DNA of 64,000 nucleotides, taken from positions 62,001 through 126,000 of the forward strand of contig NIVC01000897.1 in assembly GCA_002269645.1 (NCBI GenBank), written 5' to 3'. The translations under genes and the position numbers were made by a program. Numbering within the stretch: position 1 is the first letter of the stretch; the number at the start of each line of letters is the position of its first letter. Below the pieces are notes generated by a model. That model saw only the letters and a list, made by a program, of their open reading frames with translations, was not told the origin of the DNA and did no database searches. Origin of the DNA: Macrostomum lignano (Eukaryota). This document shows, in pieces, positions 14,850-58,391 of this stretch.

Positions 14850-23872
<9,023 letters not shown>

Positions 23873-27900: not shown

Positions 27901-30900
27901 CATGTAGGAGTGATGGAGAGTGACATGTAGGAGTGATGGAGAGTGACATGTAGGAGTGATGGAGAGTGACATGTAGGAGTGATGGAGAGTGACATGTAGG
28001 AGTGATGGAGAGTGACATGTAGGAGTGATGGAGAGTGACATGTTGGAGTGATGGAGAGTGACATGTTGGAGTGATGGAGAGTGACATATAGAAGTGACAT
28101 GTAAGAGTGATTCACACTCCTGAGAGTGACATGTAGGGGAGTGATGGAGAGTGACATGTAGAAGTGACTGTAGAGGGACATATAGAAGTGACATGTAGGA
28201 GTGATAGAGAGTGACATGTAGGAGTGATGGAGAGTGACATGTACAAGTGACTGGAGAGGGACATATAGAAGTGACATGTAGGAGTGATGGAGAGTGACAT
28301 GTAGGAGTGATGGAGAGTGACATGTTGGAGTGATGGAGAGTGACATATAGAAGTGACATGTAAGAGTGATTCACACTCCTGAGAGTGACATGTAGGGGAG
28401 TGATGGAGAGTGACATGTAGAAGTGACTGTAGAGGGACATATAGAAGTGACATGTAGGAGTGATGGAGAGTGACATGTACAAGTGACTGGAGAGTGACAT
28501 ATAGAAGTGACATGTAGGAGTGATAGAGAGTGACATGTGGAAGTTATTGGAAAAGGACATGCGGAAGTGACGGACAGGGACATGTAAGAGTGACATGTAG
28601 AAGTGACGGAGAGTGAATAGTACATGAAGGAGTGACAGATTAGAGACTGACATACTGTATTGGAGCGACTGAAACTGAAGCATTAACCTGAACAACAAGT
28701 AATAATAGGAGAAGCGTCTCACCCGTTCCCTAGCCAGCAGCGCCTGCAGCTGAGCCTCCTTTGCAGATTTCTGCTCGCGCAGTTCGGCCAACAGTTCGCG
28801 CAGCTCCAAGTAGCGCTGCTGCATCCGGGCTCGCTCCGCCGGGTCCTGCATTTTCTGGCTCAGCGCCAGCATCATCCGACTGCCGCTATGCACGGTGAGG
28901 TAGCCGCTCTCCTTTGAGGCGGCCGAGCCGCGCGATCCCGACAGCAGCTCCGAGGAGCCGCGCCGACTGCCGAACAGCAGGTTCAACGGGCCGCCCGAAC
29001 TTCGGCGGCGCTGCTGCGCTGAGGCCGGCTCTGCCGACGCTGCTGGCGCAGCTGCGATGCCGATAGGGTGCAGGTCTCGGCCTGCAGGCTTCTTGCTGCG
29101 GACTGGAATGCAGATGATGCAGAAATCCCGACTGTGTGTAGATCACAGCCTCTTTGACAAATCTAAGATGGCACGTCACGTACTGCCAAAACTGAAAGAA
29201 ATCATGATACCCTTTTGCCCCCCCCCCCTGATTGCATAACCCTGTAACCTTATCAACACTTTTAAAGGGCCTGGATGCTTCTCTTTTGCTTGTCCTCTTT
29301 TCTAAAGACAGCTTGATATTCTGGACAGCATGTGCCCTGGTTAGAGACATCTAGTGACCCTTGGCTTCCAGCTAGAGACCCTGTTCTCCATCTAGAGACC
29401 CTGGCTTCCAGTTAGAGACCCTGTTCTCCATCTAGAGACCCTGACTTCCAGCTAGAGACCCTGTTCTCCATCTAGAGACCCTGACTTCCAGTTAGAGACC
29501 CTGTTCTCCATCTAGAGACCCTGACTTCCAGCTAGAGACCCTGTTCTTCATCTAGAGACCCTTGGCTTCCAGCTAGAGACCCTGTTCTCCATCTAGAGAC
29601 CCTGACTTCCAGCTAGAGACCCTGTTCTCCATCTAGAGACCCTGACTTCCAGCTAGAGACCCTGTTCTCCATCTAGAGACCCTTGGCTTCCAGCTAGAGA
29701 CCCTGTTCTTCATCTAGAGACCCTTGGCTTCCAGCTAGAGACCCTGTAGAGACTGAGAATTTTTGAGTTTTGCACAGTAAGTCTGCTTGTGATTTTGAAG
29801 CTAAAATATCAATAGGGTCTCTGAGATCCAGCTGTGCGTCAGGGAAATGGGTCAACTACAGCGAGTACGCTTGAGCACGTACAATTCACAGACAACGGAG
29901 GGGTTGAGAATCCTCTCATTAATTTCTGTCCCCAGTTTGCCTAGGCTTTCTGTTGCTATTTTTAGTAACAAGCTAAATAGCTTTCAGAGCTGGTGAGGCC
30001 TCACGTTTTCCTGTGTATCCCGCGACATTTCTCTTTCATATTAGCACTATTCTACTCACATGAGTAGACAGGCTCGATCGTTCAGATATATTTTCTCTCT
30101 CACTAAATCGAATCTTTTTTTAAAGGATTACAGCGGGAATAATTCGAGTATGAAACAGTTTTCTTGTAGCCAAATATTTGCGCAAATGTAAGCCCCGTGA
30201 AAATGATCGTAAATCATGGCTGGAGTTCGCAACGGAATTGCTTGTTGGGCGTGCTAGTGTTGGTGCATTGAATCGCATGCCAAAAGCATAATTTGTATGC
30301 GAATCAAATAACGCCTATCGTTTTGGTTGTAGCCTATGCTTGGAACAAGAATTAGGTGTGCAGTTCGGAGTCTAAGTGCGAGAACTGAAGTCTTCGGTGT
30401 GAGGAATCGGGTACTCAGTGTGAGGAATCGGGTACTCAGTGTGAGGAATCGGGTACTCAGTGTGAGGAATCGGGTACTCAGTGTGAGGAATCGGGTACTC
30501 AGTGTGAGGAATCGGGTACTCAGTGTGAGGAATCGGGTACTCAATATGAGGAATCGGATACTCAGTGTGAGGAATCGGGTACTCAGTGTGAGGAATCGGA
30601 TACTCAGTGTGAGGAATCGGATACTCAATATGAGGAATCGGGTACTCAGTGTGAGGAATCGGATACTCAATATGAGGAATCGGGTACTCAGTGTGAAGAA
30701 TCGGGTACTCAGTGTGAGGAATCGGATACTCAGTGTGAGGAATCGGATACTCAGTGTGAGGAATCAGGTACTCAGTGTGAAGAATCTGTTATTCAGTTTG
30801 AGGAATCGGATACTCAGTGTGAGGAATCGGATACTCAATATGAGGAATCGGGTACTCAGTGTGAGGAATCGGATACTCAGTGTGAGGAATCGGATACTCA

Positions 30901-32917
30901 GTGTGAGGAATCGGATACTCAATATGAGGAATCGGATACTTAGTGTGAGGAATCGGGTACTCAGTGTGAGGAATCGGATACTCAGTGTGAAGAATCTGTT
31001 ATTCAGTTTGAGGAATCGGATACTCAGTGTGAGGAATCGGATACTCAGTGTGAGGAATCGGTTACCCAGTGTGAGGAATCGGTTACCCAGTGTGAGGAAT
31101 CGGATACTCAATATGAGGAATCGGATACTCAGTGTAAGGAATCGGGTAGTCAGTGTGAGGAATCGGGTACTTAGTGTGAGGAATCGGATACTTAGTGTGA
31201 GGAATCGGATACTCAGTGTGAGGAATCGGATACTTAGTGTGAGGAATCGGATACTTAGTGTGAGGAATCGGATACTCAGTGTGAGGAATCGGATACTTAG
31301 TGTGAGGAATCGGTTACTCAGTGTGAAGAATCGGATACTCAATATGAGGAATCGGATAGTGAGTGTGAGGAATCGGATACTCAGTGTGAGGAATCGGTTA
31401 CTCAGTGTGAGGAATCGGATACTCAATGTGAGGAATCGGGTACTCAGTGTGAGGAATCGGGTAGTCAGTGTGAAGAATCAGGTACTCAGTGTGAGGAATC
31501 GGATACTCAGTGTAAGGAATCGGGTAGTCAGTGTGAGGAATCGGATACTCAGTGTGAGGAATCGGATACTCAGTGTGAGGAATCAGATACTCAGTGTGAG
31601 GAATCGGATACTCAATGTGAGGAATCGGGTACTCAGTGTGAGGAATCGGGTACTCAGTGTGAGGAATCGGGTACTCAGTGTGAGGAATCAGGTACTCAGT
31701 GTGAGGAATCGGGTAGTCAGTGTGAGGAATCGGATACTCAGTGCGAGGAATCAGATACTCAGTGCGAGGAATCGGATACTCAGTGTGAGGAATCGGATAC
31801 TCAGTGCGAGGAATCAGATACTCAGTGTGAGGAATCGGGTACTCAGTGTGAGGAATCGGATACTCAATGAGAGGAATCGGATACTCAGTGTGAGGAATCG
31901 GGTACTCAGTGTGAGGAATCAGGTACTCAGTGTGAGCCTGTCGCCAAGTCTTACTCTGCGGCGACCCTGACCGCGCCCCGCCACCAGCGCTGAGCTCCAG
32001 CGAGTCCGCCCTGTCCCGGCTGACCGCGCCGACTCCGGCTGGAGCTGTCTGCACCGAGCTGCTGCTGCCGAACTCAGCAGGTCCGCCTACTCTGAAGCCG
32101 TTGAGATTTGCAGCTTCTCGGCTGGGTGAAGGATTTGCCCGATCAGGGGCCGCAGTTGCCGCTGCTGCTGCCGCTGCTGCTGCCGCAGCCTTATTATGGA
32201 ATTCTTTCAGGTCAGTCTGTCGTGTAGAAGTTTGGGATGCAATCAGATAAAGTAGGTTGTGTGAATATTAGGGTTGTAGTTTTAGATTAAGCTTGGAGAT
32301 GAGGCTGATGTAAGATTGAGACGTGGCTGATGTAAGATCGAGACGTGGCTGATGTAAGATCGAGACGTGGCTGATGTAAGATCGAGACGTGGCTGATGTA
32401 AGATCGAGACGTGGCTGATGTAAGATTGAGACGTGGCTGATATAAGATTGAGACGTGGCTGATGTAAGATCGAGACGTGGCTGATGTAAGATCGAGACGT
32501 GGCTGATGTAAGATCGAGACGTGGCTGATGTAAGATCGAGACGTGGCTGATGTAAGATTGAGACGTGGCTGATGTAAGATTGAGACGTGGCTGATATAAG
32601 ATTGAGACGCGGCTGATGTAAGATTGAGACGTGGCTGATGTAAGATTGAGACGTGGCTGATTTGAGCCTGAGATGAGGCCTAAGTGAAGCGAGTACTCAG
32701 CCAAAGATGCGATGACGAGTCAAGAAAACTGTTCCGTCACGTCCAAAACTACATGACGCCAGTCACGATTGCAACCAGATTAAAGTCAGTTGGGTTAATG
32801 CAATGAATAGCTACAGCTCACCAAGTTATTGTCCGAGTGGAACCTGGACCCCTTCTCCCTGACGGACAGGTAGACCTGTCGGCTGTCCCTCCGTTTCGAC
32901 AACCGCTTGGATGACAT
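24904..32917 (-). CDS. CUPID/DUF3338-domain protein (FRMD4/CCDC120/INAVA-related, no FERM seen); 8 exons: 32822-32917, 31955-32216, 28723-29102, 26358-26555, 26127-26270, 25778-26017, 25602-25693, 24904-25450 (about 652 aa)
   Basis: Spliced product [23 protein letters not shown]|ELTGK ... [37 protein letters not shown]|LSQL matches the recalled FRMD4A CUPID pattern (LREAELTGK; LEREFAIQ..KKLKKQRKTSYLNALKKLQ). All junctions are GT-AG and phase-consistent. The rest is low-complexity Ser/Ala/Gln sequence. Confidence 0.68.
27280..27300 (+). repeat. Short interstitial (TTAGGG)3 tract
   Basis: GGGTTAGGGTTAGGGTTAGGG seen directly. Confidence 0.6.
27860..28620. repeat. 23-bp minisatellite (GAGAGTGACATGTAGGAGTGATG)n with internal block duplication
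   Basis: Tandem units; the TTCACACTCCT interruption occurs twice (28110, 28369), indicating a roughly 260-bp duplication. Confidence 0.93.
29343..29746. repeat. 40-bp dimeric minisatellite (two related 20-mers, each ending CTAGAGA)
   Basis: CCCTGACTTCCAGCTAGAGA / CCCTGTTCTCCATCTAGAGA alternate about 10 times. Confidence 0.93.
30397..31935. repeat. 21-bp minisatellite (GTGTGAGGAATCGGATACTCA)n, about 1.5 kb
   Basis: About 73 units; source of the spurious 544-aa ORF. Confidence 0.97.
32300..32660. repeat. 22-bp minisatellite (GCTGATGTAAGATCGAGACGTG)n
   Basis: About 16 units. Confidence 0.95.
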
Positions 32918-33849: not shown

Positions 33850-36800
33850 CTTGCAGTTTGGATATCAGTGCAAATCATTGTAGTTTTTGGGGATCAGTGC
33901 AAATCATTGTAGTTTTTGGGGATCAGTGCAAATCCTTGTAGTTTTTGGGGATCAGTGCAAATCCTTGTAGTTTTTGGGGATCAGTGCAAATCCTTGTAGT
34001 TTTTGGGGATCAGTACAAATCCTTGTAGGTTGGGGATCAGTGCAAATCCTTGTAGGTTGGGGATCAGTGCAAATCCTTGTAGTTTGGGGATCAGTGCAAA
34101 TCCTTGTAGTTTTTGGGGATCAGTGCAAATCCTTGTAGTTTTTGGGGATCAGTGCAAATCCTTGTAGTTTGGGGATCAGTGCAAATCATTGTAGTTTTTG
34201 GGGATCAGTGCAAATCCTTGTAGTTTTTGGGGATCAGTGCAAATCCTTGTAGTTTTTGGGGATCAGTGCAAATCCTTGTAGTTTGGGGATCAGTGCAAAT
34301 CATTGTAGTTTTTGGGAATCAGTGCAAATCCTTGTAGTTTTTGGGGATCAGTGCAAATCCTTGTAGTTTTTGGGGATCAGTGCAAATCCTTGTAGTTTGG
34401 GGATCAGTGCAAATCATTGTAGTTTTTGGGGATCAGTGCAAATCCTTGTAGTTTTTGGGGATCAGTGCAAATCCTTGTAGTTTGGGGATCAGTGCAAATC
34501 ATTGTAGTTTTTGGGGATCAGTGCAAATCATTGTAGTTTTTGGGGATCAGTGCAAATCCTTGTAGTTTTTGGGGATCAGTGCAAATCCTTGTAGTTTGGG
34601 GATCAGTGCAAATCATTGTAGTTTTTGGGGATCAGTGCAAATCCTTGTAGTTTGGGGATCAGTGCAAATCATTGTAGTTTTTGGGGATCAGTGCAAATCC
34701 TTGTAGTTTTTGGGGATCAGTGCAAATCCTTGTAGTTTGGGGATCAGTGCAAATCATTGTAGTTTTTGGGATCAGTGCAAATCCTTGTAGTTTTTGGGGA
34801 TCAGTGCAAATCCTTGTAGTTTTTGGGGATCAGTGCAAATCCTTGTAGTTTTTGGGGATCAGTGCAAATCCTTGTAGTTTTTGGGGATCAGTGCAAATCC
34901 TTGTAGTTTGGGGATCAGTGCAAATCCTTGTAGTTTTTGGGAATCAGTGCAAATCCTTGTAGTTTTTGGGGATCAGTGCAAATCATTGTAGTTTTTGGGA
35001 ATCAGTGCAAATCCTTGTAGTTTTTGGGGATCAGTGCAAATCATTGTAGTTTTTGGGGATCAGTGCAAATCCTTGTAGTTTTTGGGGATCAGTGCAAATC
35101 ATTGTAGTTTTTGGGAATCAGTGCAAATCCTTGTAGTTTTTGGGAATCAGTGCAAATCATTGTAGTTTTTGGGAATCAGTGCAAATCCTTGTAGTTTTTG
35201 GGGATCAGTGCAAATCATTGTAGTTTTTGGGATCAGTGCAAATCCTTGTAGTTTTTGGGAATCAGTGCAAATCCTTGTAGTTTTTGGGGATCAGTGCAAA
35301 TCATTGTAGTTTTTGGGGATCAGTGCAAATCCTTGTAGTTTTTGGGAATCAGTGCAAATCCTTGTAGTTTTTGGGGATCAGTGCAAATCATTGTAGTTTT
35401 TGGGGATCAGTGCAAATCATTGTAGTTTTTGGGAATCAGTGCAAATCCTTGTAGTTTTTGGGGGTCAGTGCAAATCATTGTAGTTTTTGGGGATCAGTGC
35501 AAATCATTGTAGTTTTTGGGGATCAGTGCAAATCCTTGTAGTTTTTGGGAATCAGTGCAAATCCTTGTAGTTTTTGGGGATCAGTGCAAATCCTTGTAGT
35601 TTTTGGGGATCAGTGCAAATCCTTGTAGGTTGGGGATCAGTGCAAATCATTGTAGTTTTTGGGGATCAGTGCAAATCCTTGTAGTTTTTGGGAATCAGTG
35701 CAAATCATTGTAGTTTTTGGGGATCAGTGCAAATCCTTGTAGTTTTTGGGAATCAGTGCAAATCCTTGTAGTTTTTGGGGATCAGTGCAAATCATTGTAG
35801 TTTTTGGGGATCAGTGCAAATCATTGTAGTTTTTGGGGATCAGTGCAAATCCTTGTAGTTTTTGGGAATCAGTGCAAATCCTTGTAGTTTTTGGGGATCA
35901 GTGCAAATCCTTGTAGTTTTTGGGGATCAGTGCAAATCCTTGTAGGTTGGGGATCAGTGCAAATCCTTGTAGTTTTTGGGGATCAGTGCAAATCATTGTA
36001 GTTTTTGGGGATCAGTGCAAATCCTTGTAGTTTTTGGGGATCAGTGCAAATCCTTGTAGTTTGGGGATCAGTGCAAATCATTGTAGTTTTTGGGGATCAG
36101 TGCAAATCCTTGTAGTTTGGGGATCAGTGCAAATCATTGTAGTTTTTGGGGATCAGTGCAAATCCTTGTAGTTTTTGGGGATCAGTGCAAATCCTTGTAG
36201 TTTGGGATCAGTGCAAATCATTGTAGTTTTTGGGGATCAGTGCAAATCCTTGTAGTTTTTGGGGATCAGTGCAAATCCTTGTAGTTTTTGGGGATCAGTG
36301 CAAATCCTTGTAGTTTTTGGGGATCAGTGCAAATCCTTGTAGTTTTTGGGGATCAGTGCAAATCCTTGTAGTTTGGGGATCAGTGCAAATCCTTGTAGTT
36401 TTTGGGAATCAGTGCAAATCCTTGTAGTTTTTGGGGATCAGTGCAAATCATTGTAGTTTTTGGGATCAGTGCAAATCCTTGTAGTTTTTGGGGATCAGTG
36501 CAAATCATTGTAGTTTTTGGGGATCAGTGCAAATCCTTGTAGTTTTTGGGGATCAGTGCAAATCATTGTAGTTTTTGGGAATCAGTGCAAATCCTTGTAG
36601 TTTTTGGGAATCAGTGCAAATCATTGTAGTTTTTGGGAATCAGTGCAAATCCTTGTAGTTTTTGGGGATCAGTGCAAATCATTGTAGTTTTTGGGGATCA
36701 GTGCAAATCCTTGTAGTTTTTGGGAATCAGTGCAAATCCTTGTAGTTTTTGGGGATCAGTGCAAATCATTGTAGTTTTTGGGGATCAGTGCAAATCCTTG

Positions 36801-39800
36801 TAGTTTTTGGGAATCAGTGCAAATCCTTGTAGTTTTTGGGATCAGTGCAAATCATTGTAGTTTTTGGGGATCAGTGCAAATCCTTGTAGTTTTTGGGAAT
36901 CAGTGCAAATCCTTGTAGTTTTTGGGGATCAGTGCAAATCATTGTAGTTTTTGGGGATCAGTGCAAATCCTTGTAGTTTTTGGGGATCAGTGCAAATCCT
37001 TGTAGTTTTTGGGATCAGTGCAAATCCTTGTAGTTTTTGGGGATCAGTGCAAATCCTTGTAGTTTTTGGGGATCAGTGCAAATCCTTGTAGTTTTTGGGA
37101 TCAGTGCAAATCATTGTAGTTTTTGGGGATCAGTGCAAATCCTTGTAGTTTTTGGGAATCAGTGCAAATCCTTGTAGTTTTTGGGGATCAGTGCAAATCC
37201 TTGTAGTTTTTGGGATCAGTGCAAATCCTTGTAGTTTTTGGGGATCAGTGCAAATCCTTGTAGTTTTTGGGATCAGTGCAAATCCTTGTAGTTTTTGGGG
37301 ATCAGTGCAAATCCTTGTAGTTTTTGGGATCAGTGCAAATCCTTGTAGTTTTTGGGGATCAGTGCAAATCCTTGTAGTTTTTGGGGATCAGTGCAAATCC
37401 TTGTAGTTTTTGGGATCAGTGCAAATCCTTGTAGTTTTTGGGGATCAGTGCAAATCCTTGTAGTTTTTGGGATCAGTGCAAATCCTTGTAGTTTTTGGGG
37501 ATCAGTGCAAATCCTTGTAGTTTTTGGGGATCAGTGCAAATCCTTGTAGTTTTTGGGATCAGTGCAAATCCTTGTAGTTTTTGGGGATCAGTGCAAATCC
37601 TTGTAGTTTTTGGGGATCAGTGCAAATCCTTGTAGGTTGGGGATCAGTGCAAATCCTTGTAGTTTTTGGGGATCAGTGCAAATCCTTGTAGTTGGGGATC
37701 AGTGCAAATCCTTGTAGTTTTTGGGGATCAGTGCAAATCCTTGTAGTTTGGGGATCAGTGCAAATCCTTGTAGTTGGGGATCAGTGCAAATCCTTGTAGT
37801 TTGGGGATCAGTGCAAATCCTTGTAGTTTGGGGATCAGTGCAAATCCTTGTAGTTTGGGGATCAGTGCAAATCCTTGTAGTTTGGGGATCAGTGCAAATC
37901 CTTGTAGTTTTTGGGGATCAGTGCAAATCCTTGTAGTTTTTGGGGATCAGTGCAAATCCTTGTAGTTTGGGGATCAGTGCAAATCCTTGTAGTTTTTGGG
38001 GATCAGTGCAAATCCTTGTAGTTTTTGGGGATCAGTGCAAATCCTTGTAGTTTTTGGGGATCAGTGCAAATCCTTGTAGTTTTTGGGGATCAGTGCAAAT
38101 CCTTGTAGTTTTTGGGGATCAGTGCAAATCCTTGTAGTTTTTGGGGATCAGTGCAAATCCTTGTAGTTTTTGGGGATCAGTGCAAATCCTTGTAGTTTTT
38201 GGGGATCAGTGCAAATCCTTGTAGTTTTTGGGGATCAGTGCAAATCATTGTAGTTTTTGGGGATCAGTGCAAATCCTTGTAGTTTTTGGGGATCAGTGCA
38301 AATCCTTGTAGTTTTTGGGGATCAGTGCAAATCCTTGTAGTTTTTGGGGATCAGTGCAAATCCTTGTAGTTTTTGGGGATCAGTGCAAATCCTTGTAGTT
38401 TTTGGGGATCAGTGCAAATCCTTGTAGTTTTTGGGGATCAGTGCAAATCCTTGTAGTTTTTGGGGATCAGTGCAAATCCTTGTAGTTTTTGGGGATCAGT
38501 GCAAATCCTTGTAGTTTTTGGGGATCAGTGCAAATCCTTGTAGTTTTTGGGGATCAGTGCAAATCCTTGTAGTTTTTGGGGATCAGTGCAAATCCTTGTA
38601 GTTTTTGGGGATCAGTGCAAATCCTTGTAGTTTTTGGGGATCAGTGCAAATCCTTGTAGTTTTTGGGGATCAGTGCAAATCCTTGTAGTTGGGGATCAGT
38701 GCAAATCCTTGTAGTTTTTGGGGATCAGTGCAAATCCTTGTAGTTGGGGATCAGTGCAAATCCTTGTAGTTTGGGGATCAGTGCAAATCCTTGTAGTTTG
38801 GGGATCAGTGCAAATCCTTGTAGTTTGGGGATCAGTGCAAATCCTTGTAGTTTGGGGATCAGTGCAAATCCTTGTAGTTTTTGGGGATCAGTGCAAATCC
38901 TTGTAGTTTGGGGATCAGTGCAAATCCTTGTAGTTTGGGGATCAGTGCAAATCCTTGTAGTTTGGGGATCAGTGCAAATCCTTGTAGTTTGGGGATCAGT
39001 GCAAATCCTTGTAGTTTGGGGATCAGTGCAAATCCTTGTAGTTTGGGGATCAGTGCAAATCCTTGTAGTTTGGGGATCAGTGCAAATCCTTGTAGTTTTT
39101 GGGGATCAGTGCAAATCCTTGTAGTTTGGGGATCAGTGCAAATCCTTGTAGTTTGGGATCAGTGCAAATCCTTGTAGTTTGGGGATCAGTGCAAATCCTT
39201 GTAGTTTGGGGATCAGTGCAAATCCTTGTAGTTTGGGGATCAGTGCAAATCCTTGTAGTTTGGGGATCAGTGCAAATCCTTGTAGTTTGGGGATCAGTGC
39301 AAATCCTTGTAGTTTGGGGATCAGTGCAAATCCTTGTAGTTTGGGGATCAGTGCAAATCCTTGTAGTTGGGGATCAGTGCAAATCCTTGTAGTTGGGGAT
39401 CAGTGCAAATCCTTGTAGTTGGGGATCAGTGCAAATCCTTGTAGGTTGGGGATCAGTGCAAATCCTTGTAGTTGGGGATCAGTGCAAATCCTTGTAGGTT
39501 GGGGATCAGTGCAAATCCTTGTAGTTGGGGATCAGTGCAAATCCTTGTAGTTGGGGATCAGTGCAAATCCTTGTAGTTTGGGGATCAGTGCAAATCCTTG
39601 TAGTTTGGGGATCAGTGCAAATCCTTGTAGTTGGGGATCAGTGCAAATCCTTGTAGTTGGGGATCAGTGCAAATCCTTGTAAGGTTGGGGATCAGTGCAA
39701 ATCCTTGTAGTTTGGGGATCAGTGCAAATCCTTGTAGTTTGGGGATCAGTGCGAATCCTTGTAAGGTTGGGGGATCAGTGCAAATCCTTGTAGTTTGGGG

Positions 39801-40010
39801 ATCAGTGCGAATCCTTGTAAGGTTGGGGGATCAGTGCAAATCCTTGTAGTTTGGGGATCAGTGCAAATCCTTGTAGTTTGGGGATCAGTGCAAATCCTTG
39901 TAGTTTGGGGATCAGTGCAAATCCTTGTAGTTTGGGGATCAGTGCAAATCCTTGTAGTTGGGGATCAGTGCAATCCTTGTAGTTTGGATCAGTGCAAATC
40001 CTTGTAGTTT
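33850..40010. repeat. About 6.2-kb satellite array of 26-29-bp units (GGGGATCAGTGCAAATCCTTGTAGTTTTT)n, intergenic
   Basis: More than 200 tandem units, no spacers. Confidence 0.99.
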
Positions 40011-41700
40011 TTCAGTGGGCAGCGGTAGCAGACAGACTGGGGATACTGAAGCGCAAGCATGAAATAGTGATTGAATGGCATGTGAAGCTGTGAGTCCTCA
40101 GCTACAGAGGCAAACCGAGGCGAAGGAATTATCTATTAAAATCTAGAAACTAGAAAAACCCGCATATTTTGCTACTCAAAGTAGCAGAAAAAGAGTTATT
40201 TCACACTCTAACTAGCTAAATATTGCTTTAAATGGTGAGACGCTTGAAAATGAAGTCAAGCCAGTCTTAATTTGCATCTAAGCTATTGCAATAAATTCAG
40301 AGAGAAAGCTCAATTGACTTTCTGCCTTGCGTCTGACCTAAAAAATGCGCCTCTTTGTCCGCTTGCATTTCTGCATTTTCAGTCTCAATCAAGCGGTCGC
40401 AGGTTGAATAGTGTCGAGTGTGGGAGAGGGCGAGTGGGGGCTCAAGGCTCCGTTCGGATTGTCTCAAATTACAGCAACATTCGGCCGCGTGTCAGGCTGG
40501 GCAGTCTTGCATTCGAAATTAGTTTGAATTCGAACAAATTGGTCGCCTCTGGCCCTTTTTGATTTCCTGTAGCCTTTTGCAATGCTATTTTAGGATATTA
40601 TAAGCATCATATTGTTGTCTGACTGTCTGAAACTTCAATAACACATTTTTAAATTAACAGCTTAACTAGCAGATTATATTATAAGTTCGATCGGTAACGC
40701 AGCACTCGACTAGCACAGCAACTGACTTGCTGGCAGATCTCGGTCGCAATCCTTGCCCACCAGCCCCTGGCTGAAACTGCGCAGTCCCCAAAGTTGTTGT
40801 TGGTGCAGCGCCCTCTGTTTTCGTTAAAGCCGAATTGCTCTTCGCTACAAACCAGCCGATTCCCAGGCAGCAGAAGCAGCAGCAGTAATTGAATACAGTA
40901 AAAAAAGAAGCAGAAAAAGTTTCAGACCCCCCAAGTAAAGAAGTGAGAGGTGGAGAACCAGAGAAAAGCAGCACTTGCCCGCCGCGGAGAGCCCGAAAAG
41001 CTGTGCAAAACCCCCGTCTCCACCGGACTGGAACCAGCCGAACGGAAATGAAAGAAGAAACAAAGCCAACGAAGAAGAAGAAGAAGAAAACGCATATAAA
41101 TAGGCGTCAGTTTTAGAGACGACCAGGCGAGAGCGGCGGCGGCGGAGGCGCGCATTCCGAGGACAGCTTGGCGAGCTGACTGTCTGCAGATGGTGAGAGC
41201 ACCGGCTATAGTTGTAGAGCTGAACCCGAAGGGGAGCTGCTTGAACTGACACACCGCCTGACAGCACTGTGTCATGGAGCTGCTCTCTTGCTGGTTCCTC
41301 TTCTGTCTTCAGGCCAACCCGCAGTTCTCTGATCCCAGTTCGCATGGTACAAATAAACTACCTTTTGCATGATCAGCATGTTTAAAAATTGCCTTTTCGA
41401 TTTGTCTTTTTTATTTGTGTGTAATTGAGAGGGGCGCAGATACAACTGGGAAAGGGAGGAAAATATTTACAGTATAGCAAGTGATTGTCACTAAAAAGTT
41501 AATCTCCTCGGGCATTATACGAGCGATAAGAAAGTGTTTGATTATTGAATAGGTTAGTGTAAAAGGTGACACCGCAGGTGCACTGCATGATTTAAAACAA
41601 TTTTACATACACATGGAGCAATCCGCCATTAGCTTTGCTACATAATCTAAGTGAGTTACCAGTAGCACACAGCCGGAGGCTGAGAAAGATACATGAAAGC

Positions 41701-44700
41701 TCAAATGGCCCACCAGCGACATCCGTCGCCAGACATGGTCACTGTTGCCGCCTCGCCGTCGTCGCCTTCGCCTTCACCGTCGCTGTCCGGTCCACTAGAA
41801 AACTGGGCATCGGCTTCGTCTCTGCCCTTGTACTCAAAGCTGGCGCTTCTGTCTTCTTGTCTCTCACTGCCCGAGCTCCAGCTGCCAACAAATCCAGTTT
41901 CGATGCTCCCGGCTTTGCTGCTACCGACAAATCCTGCTGGATCCTTGTCTGATCCGTCTTGCATCTCGTTGCTGCTCGATTCTTTATTGCATCGCTCTTT
42001 GATCTTGCCGACATTGTCGTTGAGCTCACCAGTTGTGGATTGCTTGCCGCTGGCCAGGGTGACTGCCGCGCTCTCTTCGTTGTCCAGCTCGGCCAGGAAT
42101 TGCTCGACTTTGCTCCGGCCCAGAATGCGAGCGCAGTCAAGCGCCGTGAGGTCCCAGCGATCGCGCAGGCGTCGGTCGACGCGGCAGACGCTGCAGAGGA
42201 ACTGAACAGCGGCCAGGCGGCCCTCCGACGCGGCCACGTGTAGAGGGGTGCGGCTGTCGTAGTCACAGGAGTTCATGTCGTGGCCCTGTGACGGAGTGGA
42301 CAGCACTGTCAATGTTAGCCTTCAGCCAAATTCCCCTCATGGAATTCCCTTCATGGAACTCCCACATGGAACTCCCACATGGAATTCCCCACATGGAATT
42401 CCCTTCATGAAATTTTCTTCATGGAATTCCCCTCATCGAATTCCCCTTATGGAATTCCCTAATGGAATTCCTCTAATGGAACTCCCCTCACCGAATTCCC
42501 CTCACCGAATTCCCCTCACCGAATTCCCCTCACCGAATTCCCCTCACCGAATCCCCCTCACCGAATTCCCCTCAACGAATTCCCCTCACCGAATTCCCCT
42601 CACCGAATTCCCCTCACCGAATTCCCCTCACCGAATTCCCCTCACCGAATTCCCCTCTCCGAATTCCCCTCACCGAATTCCCCTCTCCGAATTCCCCTCA
42701 CCGAATTCCCCTCACCGAATTCCCCTCACAAAATTCCCCTCACAGAATTCCCCTCACAGAATTCCCCTCACCGAATTCCCCTCACCGAATTCCCCTCACA
42801 GAATTCCCCTCACCGAATGCCGAATTCCCCTCACCGAATGCCGAATTCCCCTCACCGAATGCCGAATTCCCCTCACCGAATGCCGAATTCCCCTCACCGA
42901 ATGCCGAATTCCCCTCACCGAATGCCGAATTCCCCATTCTTCACTTCTAGGCATACCCAGACTGAATCCCCCGCTAGCTCCTCACCGTCAAGTAGAACCG
43001 CCGCAGGCAGGCGATGTCGCCGTCTCTAGCCGCGTACAGCATGGTGGAGACAGCGTCGAACCTGGCTCTGCCCGAGTCGGCCAGCCGGCCAGTCGGGTCC
43101 AGCTTCCTGTTGTGCAGCAGCGAGTCGTACAGGTGAAAGCTGTACTGGCGCACCAGCAGCTCGCAGAAGTGCAGCGACCTGGCGGACACGCGGCCCTGCA
43201 GCAGCCGCGGGGAGTACAGGCAGAGGCCCATGACATTCGGCAGCACAGCCAAGAGGCAGCCGCTGACGCCCGCGGTGGCCGGTAAGCCGCATTTGAAGGC
43301 GAATCGGCCAGAGTGCCGGCCAAGCCCGCAGCTGTGCATCACCGACAGGGTGCTGCGGGTGGCAGCCGGGCTGAGCACCCGGTCCTCGGTCAGGGGGCAG
43401 ACTCCGCCGTTAGCCAGGGCAGCCGCGATCAGGGCCCCGGCCTTGAATTGGAGAATTGGGGATCGGGTCTGCTTGACTCCATTGTGCTTGATTGGCCCAT
43501 TCTTTGCACTCTCCACACCCCTAATTTCCAACTTCATTTTCCTCTTTGTCTTCCTCTCTGTCTCCCCCTCTTTGTCTCCCTACTCTCTCTCTCCCCTCTT
43601 TGTCTCCCTTTCTCTCTGTCTCCCACTCCGTCTCCCACTCTCTGTCTCCCACTCTCTGTCTCCCACTCTCTGTCTCCCACTCTCTGTCTCCCCCTCTCTG
43701 TCTCCCCCTCTCTGTCTCCCACTCTCTTTCTCCCACTCTCTGTCTCCCCCTCTCTGTCTCCCACTCTCTGTCTCCCCCTCTCTGTCTCCCCCTCTCTGTC
43801 TCCCACTCTCTGTCTCCCACTCTCTGTCTCCCACTCTCTGTCTCCCGCCTCACTCCACCTCACAACCTCTCGCCTCGTGTGTTATCTCCGGTAGTATTAG
43901 TGAACTGATTTTAGAAATTTGGCGAATGCATTCTACACAAATTCGCCGAATAGGTAAATAAGTAGTCAAAACGAGCATGAGTTATATAATTTCTCTACGT
44001 TAGCAAAACCTAACAAAATCCGCACCTGACAGTCAATAGAGAAGGACGCCAACTGCAGGTGCAAATCCATGGCGTCTGTAGCCTGTGCACCGGGCGGGAA
44101 GGCGCCCAGCTCCATCAGGCGGTAAGCGGCAGCCCAGTTGTGATAATTGGCCTCCCGCTGCGACAGGTACGAGCCCGTGTGCACCGACACTGAGCCTCCG
44201 GCCAGCAGGCGGCTGTAGACACGGCACAGGGCGGAGAACCGAGCGGACAGCGGGTCCTGCGGCGAGCCGATCAGGGCGGCGGTGAGCAGCGCGCCGGAGC
44301 CCGTCAGCGGGTTGAATGGCTTGCCATCCGGACCGATCTCTAAGCCTTCGTGGTGTACACCTGTTTGGATTCACCATTCTCTCATGCTGTCATTCTGTTG
44401 TAATTTTGCAAATCTGTAATGCTGACATTCTGTTATTCAGCCACTCTGCCATTCTGCCATTCTGCCATTCTGCCATTTTGCCATTCTACCATTTTGCCAT
44501 ATTGCCATTTTGCCATTCTACCATTTTGCCATATTGCCATTTTGCCATTCGGCCATTTTGCTATTCTGTCACTCTGCTATTCTGCCATTCTGCCATTCTG
44601 CTATTTTGCCATTCTGCCATTTTTATATTTTTCAGTTTTCTATTCTGCCATTCTGCCATTCTGCCATTCTGCTATTCTGCCATTCTGCCATTCTGCCATT

Positions 44701-47136
44701 CTGCCATTCTGCTATTCTGCCATTCTGCCATTCTGCTATTCTGCCATTCTGCCATTCTGCCATTCTGCCATTCTGCCATTCTGCTATTCTGCCATTCTGC
44801 CATTCTGCTATTCTGCCATTTTGCCATTCTGCCATTCTGCCATTCTGCCATTCTGCTATTCTGCCATTCTGCCATTCTGCCATTTTTCCATTCTTTCATG
44901 CCGTCATTCCGTCATTCTGCAGCAGAAATGAATGAACAATTGCTCACCAACTGGCTCATAGCCAACAAATTGGTGCACAACAACCGGTCCCTTCTCCGTC
45001 AGCGCCACAGCATAGGTGATTGGCTGGCTGCAGTCCTGCAGGCAGAAGGCCGCTCGAGAATCGCCAAGCGACAGCCGCTGACCGTCCACGGTGCACAGCG
45101 AGATGCCCCACGAATCGGGGTCGGCCTGGGTGAGCTCTGGGGTCAGGCGGCTCACCTCACCGACGTTACACTCTTGCCGCGCTTGCCTGAGCGGGTGGAT
45201 TAAGTGCATTATCGCTTGCTGGCCCAGTCACCGGAAGCTAGTGTCACAATGGAAGCTAGTGTCACAATGGAAGCTAGTGTCACAATGGAAGCTAGTGTCA
45301 CAATGGAAGCTAGTGTCACAGTGGAAGCTAGTGTCACAATGGAAGCTAGTGTCACAATGGAAGCTGCTGTCACAATGGAAGCTAGTGTCACAATGGAAGC
45401 TAGTGTCACAATGGAAGCTAGTGTCACAATGGAAGCTAGTGTCACAATGGAAGCTAGTGTCACAGTGGATCCCACTGGAACAATTTGTGTCCTTGAGTAA
45501 GACGACACTTAGCTCTGCATTGCTTCAGTTCACCCAGCTGTAAAATGGGTGCCAGCATTAGCTGGGGTAACTGAGGCTGTGTGTGGCGACCCCACAGTCC
45601 TTGGACTGAACAGCCGTACGCAGCCTTCAGATGCGCCGCGCAATAGCTGCGGCTGAGCTGTCGGTTGCACATCTGGCCCAATTGGGACAGGTGTAATCAA
45701 ATAATGTCAGAAATTTTCACTACACAGCAACATAAAATACAACAGAGTAACATGTTTTGCATGCTTAGTTAAAAGAATGTTAATATTCAATGTCCCGGAT
45801 CAAATGCAATCATTGATTATGTGATGAGAGAATGATTTTCCCTATCTCCGCAGTGCATTTTTGCCACTGCTTGCTATCTGGGGGTGCTTGCTATCTGGGG
45901 ATGCTTGCTATCTGGGGGGGGAGTGCTGGCTACCTTGGGGTGCTTGCTATCTGGGGGGGGGAGGGTGCTTGCTATCTGCGGGATGCTTGCTATCTGGGGG
46001 ATGCTTGCTATCTGCGGGGTGCTTGCTATCTGGGGGGGGGGAGTGCTGGCTACCTTGGGGGTGCTTGCTATCTGGGGGGGGGGTGCTTGCTATCTGCGGG
46101 ATGCTTGCTATCTGGGGGTGCTTGCTATCTGGGGGATGCTTGCTATCTGGGGGGGGGTGCTTGCTATCTGGGGGGGTGCTTGCTATCTGCGGGATGCTTG
46201 CTATCTGGGGGTGCTTGCTATCTGGGGGGGGGGTGCTTGCTATCTGCGGGATGCTTGCTATCTGGGGGTGCTTGCTATCTGGGGGGGGGTGCTTGCTATC
46301 TGGGGGGGGGGTGCTTGCTATCTGCGGGATGCTTGCTATCTGGGGGTGCTTGCTATCTGGGGGATGCTTGCTATCTGGGGGGGAGTGCTGGCTATCTTGG
46401 GGGTGCTTGCTATCTGGGGATGCTTGCTATCTGGGGGGTGCTTGCTATCTGGGGGATGCTTGCTATCTGGGGGTGCTTGCTATCTGGGGGATGCTTGCTA
46501 TCTGGGGGGGGAGTGCTGGCTATCTTGGGGGTGCTTGCTATCTGCGGGATGCTTGCTATCTTTTGTGAAGGCTTTATTTTGTTGTGACCTTTTGTTTGCT
46601 ATAAGAGCTTTATAGCAAACATCTTTGTCCGTGACAATTTTACTCGAATAAGGTGATTTATAATAATGAAGAAGGAATTTGTTCTTAAGAAAATGTGCTT
46701 TTTAATGGATTTGCATGAATAATTTTTTGCTCCTTGCTTATTAGGCGCCCCGAAGGGGGGCACTAGATTGCTAGTCAAATATTAAAAGCAACCCAACAAC
46801 AATGCCCACTCACTCAAACAGCATCTCGATAGTCTGCGCAAATCCGACAAAGTCGCGCACAATGAGCTCATTGCGCAGCACCTTGAGCAGAAAGACGCTG
46901 CCAGTGGCCGAGAAGATTCGCTCAACCGACTCTTTGCTGAAGGCGGCCTCGCCCTCATTGTCTGACATTGCGGCCAGCAGCTGCTGCAGGTTGGCCTTGA
47001 TGCGCGGGTCCCGCTTGTCGATGCCCTCGGTGCGCAGCCAGGCGGTCAGCTTGGCGGCCCGGATCAGGCCGAGGTCCTCGGCGCTGTAGCGGACAGCCGA
47101 AGGCGCTGCTACCTGCGAGACAGTCTGAGTCTGCAT
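41701..47136 (-). CDS. GLS: Glutaminase-like protein (N-terminal EF-hand-like bundle, glutaminase domain, ankyrin repeats), catalytic residues substituted; 5 exons: 46814-47136, 44948-45186, 44026-44360, 42986-43441, 41701-42285 (about 645 aa)
   Basis: WGISLCTVDGQRLSLGD..FCLQ, GYEP, KPFNP, ALANGGVCPLT, MHSCG..SGRFAFKCGLPA..GVSG..LPNVMGLCLYSP, YAARDGDIACLRRF, DYDSRTPLHVAASEG, DRWDLTALDCA all match GLS/GLS2 architecture. 4 GT-AG introns, phase-consistent, no frameshift or internal stop. Confidence 0.92.
42325..42932. repeat. 14-bp (CCGAATTCCCCTCA)n grading into a 21-bp variant
   Basis: Seen directly in intron 42286-42985. Confidence 0.95.
43550..43845. repeat. 14-bp pyrimidine-rich repeat (CTCTCTGTCTCCCA)n
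   Basis: Seen directly. Confidence 0.93.
44405..44920. repeat. 8-bp repeat (TTCTGCCA)n
   Basis: Seen directly. Confidence 0.95.
45234..45466. repeat. 18-bp minisatellite (GGAAGCTAGTGTCACAAT)n
   Basis: About 13 units abutting SINE copy B. Confidence 0.96.
45471..45700 (+). mobile_element. Same SINE, copy B (5'-truncated, lacks tRNA head), in the glutaminase-like gene intron
   Basis: About 230 nt nearly identical to 51090-51333, including CACCCAGCTGTAAAATGGGT and the 3' end GGTTGCACATCTGGCC..CAGGTGTAATCAA. Confidence 0.8.
45870..46560. repeat. G-rich variable-length repeat GCTTGCTATCT(G)n
   Basis: Units with runs of 4-10 G. Confidence 0.94.

Positions 47137-47730: not shown

Positions 47731-48048
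<318 letters not shown>

Positions 48049-49095: not shown

Positions 49096-58391
<9,296 letters not shown>

What the first reader, a model, noticed from the sequence alone, without database searches (positions are those of the whole stretch)
41701..47136. Intact glutaminase gene that has lost essentially its whole catalytic machinery: candidate pseudo-glutaminase
Seen: a 5-exon, about 645-aa uninterrupted ORF with full GLS architecture. The S-x-x-K motif (human FCLQSCVKP) reads FCLQDCSQP, with GAC at 45033-45035 and CAG at 45024-45026. Other changes: VADYIP to VSRLTP, NPMVNAG to NPLTGSG, YFQLCS to HLQLAS, SCGMYDFSG to SCGLGRHSG, PAKSG to PATAG, SERES to SQREA. Established: GLS is a beta-lactamase-like serine enzyme using Ser286 as nucleophile, with Lys289, Tyr414 and Tyr466 in catalysis and Tyr249, Asn335 and Glu381 in substrate binding (human numbering from memory). 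Inference: the concerted loss of active-site residues, with the fold motifs, ankyrin repeats and splice sites kept, suggests selection for a non-catalytic role such as scaffold, glutamine/phosphate sensor or dominant-negative partner in GLS tetramers or filaments.
Basis: partly seen in the sequence, partly recalled or inferred. Interest (0 to 1): 0.82.

Follow-up and report, generated by a model that had tools for sequence, protein, structure and literature searches.

The report
Catalytically dead glutaminase paralogue in a flatworm
The flatworm Macrostomum lignano keeps an intact, apparently transcribed copy of the glutamine-splitting enzyme glutaminase that has the normal fold but has lost nearly every active-site residue; similar unstudied 'dead' glutaminases turn up in fishes, a copepod and many protists.

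Summary
On the minus strand, 47136-41701, five GT-AG exons encode a 645-aa protein with the full GLS layout: helical N-domain, Glutaminase domain PF04960 and ankyrin repeats. It equals GenBank PAA75183.1 (BOX15_Mlig015753g3, Macrostomum lignano). Aligned to human KGA it reads Y249L, S286D, K289Q, N335G, E381Q, Y414H, Y466G, K481T and S482A; only Q285 and N388 remain. It is neither an assembly error nor a decaying pseudogene. Three separate loci carry intact 645-aa copies with the same D-x-x-Q. Among them pN/pS is 0.27, and the CDS has no indels against 9-13 per 1.6 kb of noncoding sequence. An AlphaFold model (pLDDT 89) superposes on human GAC at 1.5-1.8 Å. Losses are concentrated at the active site (8 of 10 sites against 18 of 86 other conserved columns). 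The activation loop and dimer-dimer interface are also rewritten, which argues against a glutamine-sensor or tetramer-partner role. No orthologue was found outside M. lignano. Dead GLS domains are not rare: teleost Glsl (G-E-x-x-W), a sea louse and many protist tandem proteins have them. I found no paper describing any of them as a pseudoenzyme. Verdict: a real, probably non-catalytic GLS paralogue, a new member of a known kind, of moderate interest.

The parts
46814..47136 (-). Exon 1 (ATG at 47136; codons 1-108, phase-2 end). Encodes the helical EF-hand-like N-domain. There is no long N-terminal presequence.
45187..46813 (-). Intron 1 (GT..AG, 1627 nt), mostly 18-nt minisatellites. It is 3246 nt long in copy g2.
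44948..45186 (-). Exon 2. Start of the glutaminase domain. Holds L122 (human Y249; 45146-45144), Q158 (Q285, kept), D159 (S286; 45035-45033) and Q162 (K289; 45026-45024).
44361..44947 (-). Intron 2 (GT..AG), mostly an 8-nt repeat (CTGCCATT). An alternative AG 15 nt inside exon 3 is used in the older model P0002.
44026..44360 (-). Exon 3. Rewritten activation-loop equivalent (GVHHEGLEI, G193 = human K320). Holds G208 (N335; 44301-44299), Q255 (E381; 44160-44158), N262 (N388, kept), R268 (Y394) and H288 (Y414; 44061-44059).
43442..44025 (-). Intron 3 (GT..AG), mostly a 14-nt repeat.
42986..43441 (-). Exon 4. Rest of the glutaminase domain plus the linker and first ANK helices. Holds G340 (Y466; 43321-43319), T355 (K481; 43276-43274) and A356 (S482; 43273-43271).
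42286..42985 (-). Intron 4 (GT..AG), 14- and 21-nt repeats.
41701..42285 (-). Exon 5. Ankyrin repeats (to about 42079), then a 125-aa Ser/Gly/Glu/Asp-rich tail with no counterpart in other GLS proteins. Stop codon TGA at 41703-41701.
41410..41415 (-). AATAAA, a candidate polyadenylation signal about 290 nt after the stop.
   Evidence: motif match only

Best explanation
This is Mlig015753, a paralogue of mitochondrial-type glutaminase (GLS/GLS2 family) so far seen only in Macrostomum lignano. It is present in three near-identical copies, and the window holds copy g3. It keeps the whole three-domain GLS fold but cannot hydrolyse glutamine by the family's Ser-x-x-Lys mechanism, because the nucleophile, the general base, both catalytic tyrosines and most substrate-contacting side chains are replaced. 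Selection maintains it as a protein. It therefore most likely acts non-catalytically, as a folded binding or scaffold module. The best-kept surfaces are the structural core and the ankyrin repeats, and it has a new acidic Ser/Gly-rich tail. It probably works outside the canonical phosphate-activated tetramer or filament, since the activation loop and dimer-dimer contacts are rewritten. It is possibly non-mitochondrial, since it lacks an N-terminal extension. Shown: the gene structure, the residue losses, fold retention in a model, three intact copies, and recent purifying selection. Inferred: loss of activity, transcription (from how the annotation was made), and the scaffold role and location.
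For: The gene model and the exact match to GenBank PAA75183.1 come. The residue roles are documented in PMC4929687: Ser286-Lys289 form the dyad, Tyr466 acts in proton transfer, and Tyr249, Gln285, Asn335, Glu381, Asn388 and Tyr414 contact the ligand. Alanine mutants of Y249, S286, K289 and Y466 lose activity. Here seven of these nine are replaced, along with K481 and S482. Losses are enriched at the active site (p=3.5e-4). The AF2 model has pLDDT 89.3 and pTM 0.80. It superposes on GAC structures at rmsd 1.5-1.8 Å with TM 0.92-0.94. Three intact copies give pN/pS 0.27, p=0.005. The CDS has no indels against 9-13 per 1.6 kb of unique noncoding sequence at the same roughly 1.1% mismatch level. 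The ORF could not survive neutral decay at the observed divergence. GC3 is 0.77 against about 50% GC in the introns. The annotation is transcript-derived. Non-catalytic function in this family has a precedent: GLS2 binds and inhibits Rac1 (PMC4749555).
Against: There is no biochemical test, and pseudoenzymes predicted from sequence sometimes prove active. No orthologue was found in any other species: nothing lies between 94% and about 42% identity among representatives of 15 billion proteins. Long-term conservation of the dead state is therefore unproven, and the constraint estimate rests on only 18 variable codons among recent duplicates, which may undergo gene conversion. A pN/pS of 0.27 indicates fairly relaxed constraint. 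I saw no expression level or tissue data. The replacement residues D159, Q162 and H288 are polar and could in principle support other chemistry or ligand binding. The scaffold role and the non-mitochondrial location are inferences with no direct data.
Confidence: 0.7

Rival explanations
1. It is a regulatory subunit. The dead paralogue forms hetero-oligomers with the canonical M. lignano GLS (Mlig006689/Mlig026033) and modulates its tetramer or filament assembly, acting as a dominant-negative or an activator in the way PDX1.2 acts on PDX1.
For: A canonical, catalytically complete GLS exists in the same genome (P0008, P0010). The overall fold and many core residues are retained. GLS activity depends on oligomerisation through the activation loop (PMC8800119).
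Against: The activation loop and the dimer-dimer contact residues are exactly what has been rewritten: F318H, N319E, K320G, F322E, D386Y, R387H, Y394R and K396M. The protein lacks the N-terminal extension of the canonical paralogue, so the two may not share a compartment.
Confidence: 0.15
2. It is a neo-functionalised enzyme or small-molecule binder. The remodelled pocket (D159, Q162, H288, Q255, with small residues G208 and G340 enlarging the cavity) carries out different chemistry or binds a different ligand.
For: The replacements are polar or small rather than pocket-filling, and Q285 and N388 are kept. Acidic residues recur at the nucleophile position in independent dead lineages, in 19 of 56 other Ser-less domains. 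This hints that the pocket is still used for something.
Against: To my knowledge (from memory) no member of the serine beta-lactamase-like fold works without the S-x-x-K dyad. Eight of 10 pocket positions have changed at once. Single alanine mutants of four of them already abolish activity in KGA.
Confidence: 0.1
3. It is a decaying duplicate: a non-functional copy left by the recent genome duplication that has simply not yet been disrupted.
For: The gene is lineage-restricted and evolves fast, with 2-2.8 times more unique changes than the canonical paralogue. The pN/pS of 0.27 is not very low. GC3 is lower than in the canonical gene, 0.77 against 0.92.
Against: The divergence from any functional GLS is 46% at the nucleotide level, yet three copies each keep a 645-codon frame with no stop and no indel. 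Simulated neutral change of only 10% destroys the ORF in 99% of runs. Noncoding sequence between the copies carries 9-13 indels per 1.6 kb. Conserved structural-core columns are largely retained (70 of 96), and the model folds with high confidence.
Confidence: 0.04
4. It is an assembly or annotation artefact that creates a false D-x-x-Q.
For: None found.
Against: The same codons occur in three loci on different contigs and in protein models from the older independent assembly (P0002, P0123, P0124). S286D needs at least two base changes from any Ser codon, and eight further sites are also changed.
Confidence: 0.01

Closest known systems
Canonical animal glutaminases GLS (KGA/GAC) and GLS2 (Pfam PF04960 with EF-hand_14 and ankyrin repeats; EC 3.5.1.2)
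   Same: They share the three-domain architecture over the whole length. Identity is 38-41% overall and 42-47% in the catalytic domain. The predicted fold superposes at 1.5-1.8 Å, and 70 of 96 strongly conserved columns are kept.
   Different: The Ser286-Lys289 dyad, Tyr249, Asn335, Glu381, Tyr414, Tyr466, Lys481 and Ser482 are all replaced. The activation loop and dimer-dimer contacts are rewritten. The N-terminal presequence region is missing, and there is an extra 125-aa acidic Ser/Gly-rich tail. None of the intron positions is shared.
Canonical M. lignano glutaminase (Mlig006689g2 / Mlig026033g1; P0008, P0010)
   Same: It is in the same genome and has the same architecture. The two share some rare flatworm-type residues such as T171, Y184 and L289.
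   Different: Identity is only 40%. The canonical gene keeps 95 of 96 conserved columns, with Y249C as its only active-site change. It has a single GC-AG intron at a different position. The dead paralogue has 2-2.8 times more unique substitutions.
Teleost Glsl ('glutaminase like'; RefSeq entries named 'glutaminase liver isoform, mitochondrial', e.g. XP_044211831.1 from Thunnus)
   Same: It has the full GLS architecture with the catalytic set replaced wholesale, including an acidic residue at the nucleophile position. In zebrafish it is expressed, in the swim bladder, and it falls outside the GLS and GLS2 clades (PMC6197330). I found no paper describing it as a pseudoenzyme.
   Different: Its signature is different (Q285G, S286E, K289W, N335E, N388L, Y414M/L, Y466K/N). 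Identity to the flatworm protein is only 32-35%, lower than to canonical GLS. It is conserved across teleosts, whereas the flatworm gene has no known orthologue. The NJ tree groups them only weakly, as long branches (bootstrap below 40), so independent origin is likely but not proven.
Non-catalytic ('moonlighting') function of human GLS2
   Same: A GLS-family protein acts through protein binding rather than catalysis: GLS2 binds Rac1 and blocks its activation (PMC4749555).
   Different: GLS2 is still a fully active enzyme. Here the catalytic function appears to have been given up entirely.
Pseudoenzymes derived from metabolic enzymes, e.g. plant PDX1.2 or viral pseudo-GATs
   Same: These are enzyme homologues that have lost catalytic residues and been retained for a regulatory role (abstracts of PMC6829848 and PMC7605207).
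   Different: They have unrelated folds and chemistry. The 'glutaminase' in those systems is the class-I amidotransferase type, not the beta-lactamase-like GLS family.

Membership tests
Glutaminase family PF04960 (GLS/GLS2-type, serine beta-lactamase-like fold) | Significant full-length match to the family profile | tested here: met
   E=3.3e-70, 237 bits (cut-off 27), model positions 1-286 of 286; human KGA at E about 1e-114.
Glutaminase family PF04960 (GLS/GLS2-type, serine beta-lactamase-like fold) | Animal GLS domain architecture: helical EF-hand-like N-domain, catalytic domain, C-terminal ankyrin repeats | tested here: met
   Ank_2, Ank_4 and Ank_5 pass their cut-offs; EF-hand_14 scores 22.2 bits against a 23.7 cut-off; the alignment to KGA runs over residues 155-660; the model matches the multidomain KGA structures 5uqe and 8gwr.
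Glutaminase family PF04960 (GLS/GLS2-type, serine beta-lactamase-like fold) | Three-dimensional fold of the catalytic domain | tested here: met
   AF2 model with pLDDT 89.3. Foldseek against GAC structures gives rmsd 1.5-1.8 Å over 393-400 columns, TM 0.92-0.94. This is a prediction, not an experimental structure.
Glutaminase family PF04960, as an active enzyme (EC 3.5.1.2) | Catalytic dyad Ser286-x-x-Lys289 | tested here: not met
   Asp159 (GAC, 45035-45033) and Gln162 (CAG, 45026-45024). The same residues occur in all three gene copies.
Glutaminase family PF04960, as an active enzyme (EC 3.5.1.2) | Catalytic and substrate-contact residues Tyr249, Gln285, Asn335, Glu381, Asn388, Tyr414, Tyr466 (PMC4929687) | tested here: not met
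   They read L, Q (kept), G, Q, N (kept), H and G; K481T and S482A are also changed. These columns are 100% conserved in 64 canonical sequences, except Tyr249, which is below the 95% threshold.
Glutaminase family PF04960, as an active enzyme (EC 3.5.1.2) | Activation loop and dimer-dimer interface used for phosphate activation (K320 loop; PMC8800119) | tested here: not met
   Human 314-SGLRFNKLFL-323 reads VGVHHEGLEI here. D386Y, R387H, Y394R and K396M are also changed. The interface roles of residues other than K320 are from memory.
Glutaminase family PF04960, as an active enzyme (EC 3.5.1.2) | Glutamine hydrolysis | not testable with these tools
   Needs a recombinant enzyme assay.
Pseudoenzyme (operational definition) | Enzyme homologue lacking residues essential for the ancestral reaction | tested here: met
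Pseudoenzyme (operational definition) | Maintained by purifying selection (not a pseudogene) | tested here: met
   Three intact copies give pN/pS 0.27, p=0.005. There are no CDS indels against 9-13 per 1.6 kb of noncoding sequence. ORF-survival simulation. Limited to within-species duplicates.
Pseudoenzyme (operational definition) | Dead state conserved in orthologues of other species | tested here: inconclusive
   No orthologue was found among representatives of 15 billion proteins or in the word-indexed search. Other Macrostomum proteomes may simply be absent from these collections.
Pseudoenzyme (operational definition) | Expressed as a spliced mRNA and as protein | tested here: inconclusive
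   The GenBank model is identical to my splice model and comes from a genome-guided RNA-seq assembly (PMC5730564). No read-level, tissue or protein data could be reached.
Teleost Glsl-type dead glutaminase | Signature G-E-x-x-W at 285-289 with N335E and N388L, plus specific sequence affinity | tested here: not met
   The signature here is Q-D-x-x-Q with N335G and N388 kept. Identity to Glsl (32-35%) is lower than to canonical GLS. The tree grouping has bootstrap below 40.

The most novel reading that the evidence does not exclude
Dead glutaminases may be a recurrent, convergently evolved class rather than isolated oddities. Examples are this flatworm gene, teleost Glsl, a copepod gene, and one domain of many protist tandem glutaminases. 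They may share a logic: the nucleophile Ser is repeatedly replaced by Asp or Glu (in the flatworm, in teleosts, and in 19 of 56 other Ser-less domains). An acidic side chain there could mimic the bound glutamate or acyl state and hold the domain in a fixed 'occupied' conformation. That conformation could be used for signalling, or for controlling the assembly of active glutaminase.
Probability: 0.15. Interest if true: 0.7.

Novelty: new member of a known kind. Interest (0 to 1): 0.45.

Why it matters
Glutaminase is a central enzyme of nitrogen and neurotransmitter metabolism and a cancer drug target. I found no paper that describes a pseudoenzyme of this fold. Databases nevertheless label this protein, and the teleost Glsl clade, simply as 'glutaminase', so metabolic reconstructions and orthology tables count an activity that is probably absent. 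M. lignano supports transgenesis (PMC5730564); RNAi is also routine in this species as far as I recall. A dead paralogue there, together with zebrafish glsl, therefore offers a practical way to ask what the GLS scaffold does apart from catalysis. That question is already raised by the catalysis-independent effects of human GLS2. On its own, a lineage-restricted dead paralogue in one flatworm is of moderate interest.

Tried and rejected
1. Orthologue search. The word-indexed search and the exhaustive HMMER search of 1.84 billion representatives found nothing between the M. lignano cluster and about 42% identity, so no cross-species dN/dS was possible.

2. Phylogenetic placement. An NJ tree with 100 bootstraps left the protein on a long branch with support below 40, grouped with other dead long branches. 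I treat this as long-branch attraction and draw no conclusion about origin from it. A count of shared rare residues points weakly to a flatworm origin: 15% shared with trematodes and 12% with the canonical M. lignano gene, against a median of 7%.

3. Intron positions as an age marker. No intron is shared with the canonical M. lignano gene or with zebrafish gls2b. This does not distinguish a retrocopy with later intron gain from general intron turnover. Nucella was not on record and the Dicrocoelium gene was too long to fetch.

4. Expression data. 'Mlig015753' appears in no paper text and in none of the supplements of three M. lignano papers.

5. Functional link to the neighbouring MFS transporter. 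I considered a glutamate-transporter link, but by eye the exons do not look SLC17-like. This was not tested and I dropped it.

6. Long ORFs elsewhere in the window, for example 30336-31970 with 'ice-binding' Pfam hits. These are translations of minisatellite arrays, not genes.

7. Assembly-error and young-pseudogene readings were rejected, as set out under the rival explanations.

Full report
What is there. The finding's coordinates are exactly those of a coding sequence on the minus strand. Reading the reverse complement and joining five exons gives a 1938-nt frame of 645 codons with one terminal stop. The exons are 47136-46814, 45186-44948, 44360-44026, 43441-42986 and 42285-41701, and all four introns are GT..AG. 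The product is identical to GenBank PAA75183.1, 'hypothetical protein BOX15_Mlig015753g3' of the free-living flatworm Macrostomum lignano. UniProt names it 'glutaminase'. Pfam finds the Glutaminase domain over its full length (E=3.3e-70) and ankyrin repeats, plus the GLS-specific EF-hand-like N-domain just under its cut-off. phmmer against the PDB aligns residues 26-536 to human kidney-type glutaminase residues 155-660 at E about 1e-114.

The active site. In the numbering of full-length human KGA (chain 8gwr_B) the substitutions are Y249L, S286D, K289Q, N335G, E381Q, Y414H, Y466G, K481T and S482A. Gln285 and Asn388 are kept. The roles of these residues are documented in PMC4929687. Ser286 and Lys289 form the catalytic dyad. 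Tyr466 takes part in proton transfer. Tyr249, Gln285, Asn335, Glu381, Asn388 and Tyr414 contact the ligand. Alanine mutants of Y249, S286, K289 and Y466 lose activity. The losses are not a by-product of general divergence. I took the 96 alignment columns that are at least 95% conserved in 64 catalytically complete GLS proteins. This protein keeps 70 of them, while the canonical M. lignano GLS keeps 95. Eight of the 10 active-site columns are changed against 18 of 86 others (Fisher p=3.5e-4). Other changes cluster in the activation loop (human SGLRFNKLFL reads VGVHHEGLEI, including K320G) and in the helix that forms the dimer-dimer contact (D386Y, R387H, Y394R, K396M). K320 lies in the activation loop at the dimer-dimer interface (PMC8800119). 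The roles of the other interface residues are from memory.

Not an artefact and not a decaying copy. The public assembly GCA_002269645.1 holds three copies on different contigs: g1 (locus L003), g2 (locus L001) and g3 (this window). They have syntenic flanks. All three are intact at 645 codons and all read LQDCSQ. So do protein models from the older independent assembly. Among the three copies 18 codons vary, 10 synonymously and 8 non-synonymously. That gives pN/pS of 0.27, with a one-sided binomial p of 0.005 against neutrality. Unique, non-repeat intron and flank sequence differs between copies by 1.1%, close to the synonymous rate, and carries 9-13 gap openings per about 1.6 kb. The 1938-nt CDS has none in any copy. 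The coding sequence differs from the canonical M. lignano GLS at 46% of aligned nucleotides. In simulations of substitution only, the frame survives 10% random change in about 1% of runs and 20% in none of 5000. GC3 is 0.77 against about 50% GC in the introns. The GenBank gene set for this assembly was built from a genome-guided RNA-seq transcriptome, and transcripts at least 95% identical share a name prefix (PMC5730564). The annotated spliced model, identical to mine, therefore implies a transcript. I could not see reads or expression levels.

Fold. An AlphaFold2 model of residues 1-533, built with a 76-sequence alignment, has mean pLDDT 89.3 and pTM 0.80. Foldseek places it on human and mouse GAC structures at rmsd 1.5-1.8 Å over 393-400 columns (TM 0.92-0.94). 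It also matches the multidomain KGA and GLS2 structures, including the ankyrin domain. The last 125 residues are rich in Ser, Gly, Glu and Asp and have no counterpart in other GLS proteins.

Origin. M. lignano also has a canonical GLS (P0008, P0010) with the full catalytic set apart from Y249C. The two paralogues are 40% identical. The dead one has 2-2.8 times more unique substitutions in relative-rate tests with five outgroups (p from 1e-3 to 1e-8). An NJ tree leaves it on a long, unplaced branch. It shares rare derived residues most often with flatworm GLS: trematodes 15%, canonical M. lignano 12%, against a median of 7%. This weakly suggests a duplication within flatworms. None of its four introns coincides with the single GC-AG intron of the canonical gene or with any of the 17 introns of zebrafish gls2b. 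All four introns consist largely of minisatellites. An exhaustive HMMER search of representatives of about 15 billion proteins found no orthologue elsewhere. Other Macrostomum proteomes may simply be missing from that collection.

How it most likely works. The canonical acyl-enzyme mechanism is not available, and five of the seven substrate-contacting side chains are gone. Glutamine hydrolysis and glutamine sensing are therefore both unlikely; this is an inference. The elements that couple canonical GLS to phosphate activation and to tetramer or filament assembly are also rewritten, which argues against a simple role as a partner in canonical tetramers. What is kept is the structural core, the ankyrin repeats and the N-domain, and a new acidic tail has been added. 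The protein also lacks the roughly 70-residue N-terminal extension of the canonical paralogue, so it may not be mitochondrial; this is a weak inference. My best reading is a non-catalytic binding or scaffold protein. A precedent is the catalysis-independent binding of Rac1 by human GLS2 (PMC4749555). The rivals are a regulator of canonical GLS, a protein with new ligand binding or chemistry, and a decaying duplicate. They are weighed in their own sections.

How unusual it is. Thirty-six teleost proteins among the top hits carry G-E-x-x-W in place of Q-S-x-x-K, with N335E, N388L, Y414M/L and Y466K/N. RefSeq names them 'glutaminase liver isoform, mitochondrial'. This is probably the zebrafish gene glsl, which one paper notes only as a 'novel Ensembl prediction' that does not cluster with GLS or GLS2 and is expressed in the swim bladder (PMC6197330). 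A sea-louse transcript (Caligus, P0250), several unnamed eukaryotic sequences, and one of the two domains in many 900-1300-aa tandem glutaminase proteins also lack the dyad. In 19 of 56 such domains outside teleosts and M. lignano, the nucleophile Ser is replaced by Asp or Glu, as it is here. Full-text searches found no paper that treats any GLS-family protein as a pseudoenzyme. The hits concern amidotransferase-type 'glutaminase' domains instead.

Verdict. It is a new, undescribed member of a known kind: a pseudoenzyme derived from a metabolic enzyme. It is lineage-restricted on present data, and it is one of several apparently independent dead GLS lineages. Interest is moderate. It would rise if the recurrent acidic replacement of the nucleophile turned out to reflect a shared non-catalytic mechanism.

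Noticed in passing
Proteins P0078-P0120, e.g. P0088 = XP_044211831.1 from Thunnus albacares: A teleost-wide clade annotated 'glutaminase liver isoform, mitochondrial' has G-E-x-x-W instead of Q-S-x-x-K, plus N335E, E381S/L, N388L, Y414M/L and Y466K/N. It is probably zebrafish glsl. It looks like a vertebrate dead glutaminase that databases label as an active enzyme.
   Followed up: partly
Proteins P0003, P0004, P0125-P0147 and others: Many proteins of 900-1300 aa, mostly unnamed eukaryotic or metagenomic sequences, carry two glutaminase domains in tandem. One domain is canonical and the other lacks the Ser-Lys dyad.
   Followed up: partly
Domain signature table: In Ser286-less glutaminase domains outside teleosts and M. 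lignano, the nucleophile position is Ala in 22 of 56 and Asp or Glu in 19 of 56. It is also acidic in the flatworm (Asp) and in teleost Glsl (Glu). This is a recurrent acidic replacement with no explanation so far.
   Followed up: partly
P0250, P0273, P0274 (Caligus rogercresseyi transcripts): A sea-louse transcript encodes another single-domain GLS homologue without the catalytic set (signature -RDKEQQNHMS). In the NJ tree it sits beside the canonical copepod GLS.
   Followed up: no
L002 3001-5502 (canonical M. lignano GLS, Mlig006689g2): The canonical paralogue has Cys at the Tyr249 position, a GC3 of 0.92, and one intron only. That intron has a GC-AG boundary and lies between codons 209 and 210, a position not shared with zebrafish gls2b.
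   Followed up: partly
window 42329-46561 (introns) and the whole window: All four introns are made largely of 8-21-nt minisatellites. The window holds about 30 such arrays, including a 6.2-kb array of a 29-nt unit at 33857-40012, a related 27-nt array at 16175-17300, and (TAG)100 at 47731-48031. Intron 1 is 1627 nt here but 3246 nt in copy g2.
   Followed up: partly
window 30336-31970 (+) and other long ORFs: Several long ORFs are translations of tandem arrays, not genes. For example, the 544-aa ORF over the 21-nt array at 30397-31936 gives spurious Pfam hits such as 'grass antifreeze beta roll'.
   Followed up: yes
window 41401-44025 compared with L001 and L003: Differences among the three gene copies lie almost entirely in the 5' half. 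Exons 4-5, the unique parts of introns 3-4 and 300 nt of 3' flank are identical or differ at one or two sites. This suggests gene conversion or uneven divergence between the duplicated loci.
   Followed up: partly
window 44346-44360 (start of exon 3): The older-assembly model P0002 (A0A1I8J099) uses an AG 15 nt downstream, which removes VHHEG from the activation-loop equivalent. The upstream acceptor keeps the loop length of canonical GLS. Which form is made, or whether both are, is unknown.
   Followed up: no
window about 49800-55600 (-): An MFS-type transporter gene lies upstream on the same strand and is syntenic in all three loci (faint MFS_1 hits). Its 3' region holds a 71-nt tandem array at 49515-50339. 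I did not test whether it is co-transcribed with the glutaminase paralogue; polycistronic precursors are reported for about 7% of M. lignano transcriptional units.
   Followed up: no
window 8822-10291 (+): An ORF has a LIM-domain match (E=9e-6) just downstream of a 10-nt tandem array. It is possibly an exon of a real LIM-domain gene.
   Followed up: no
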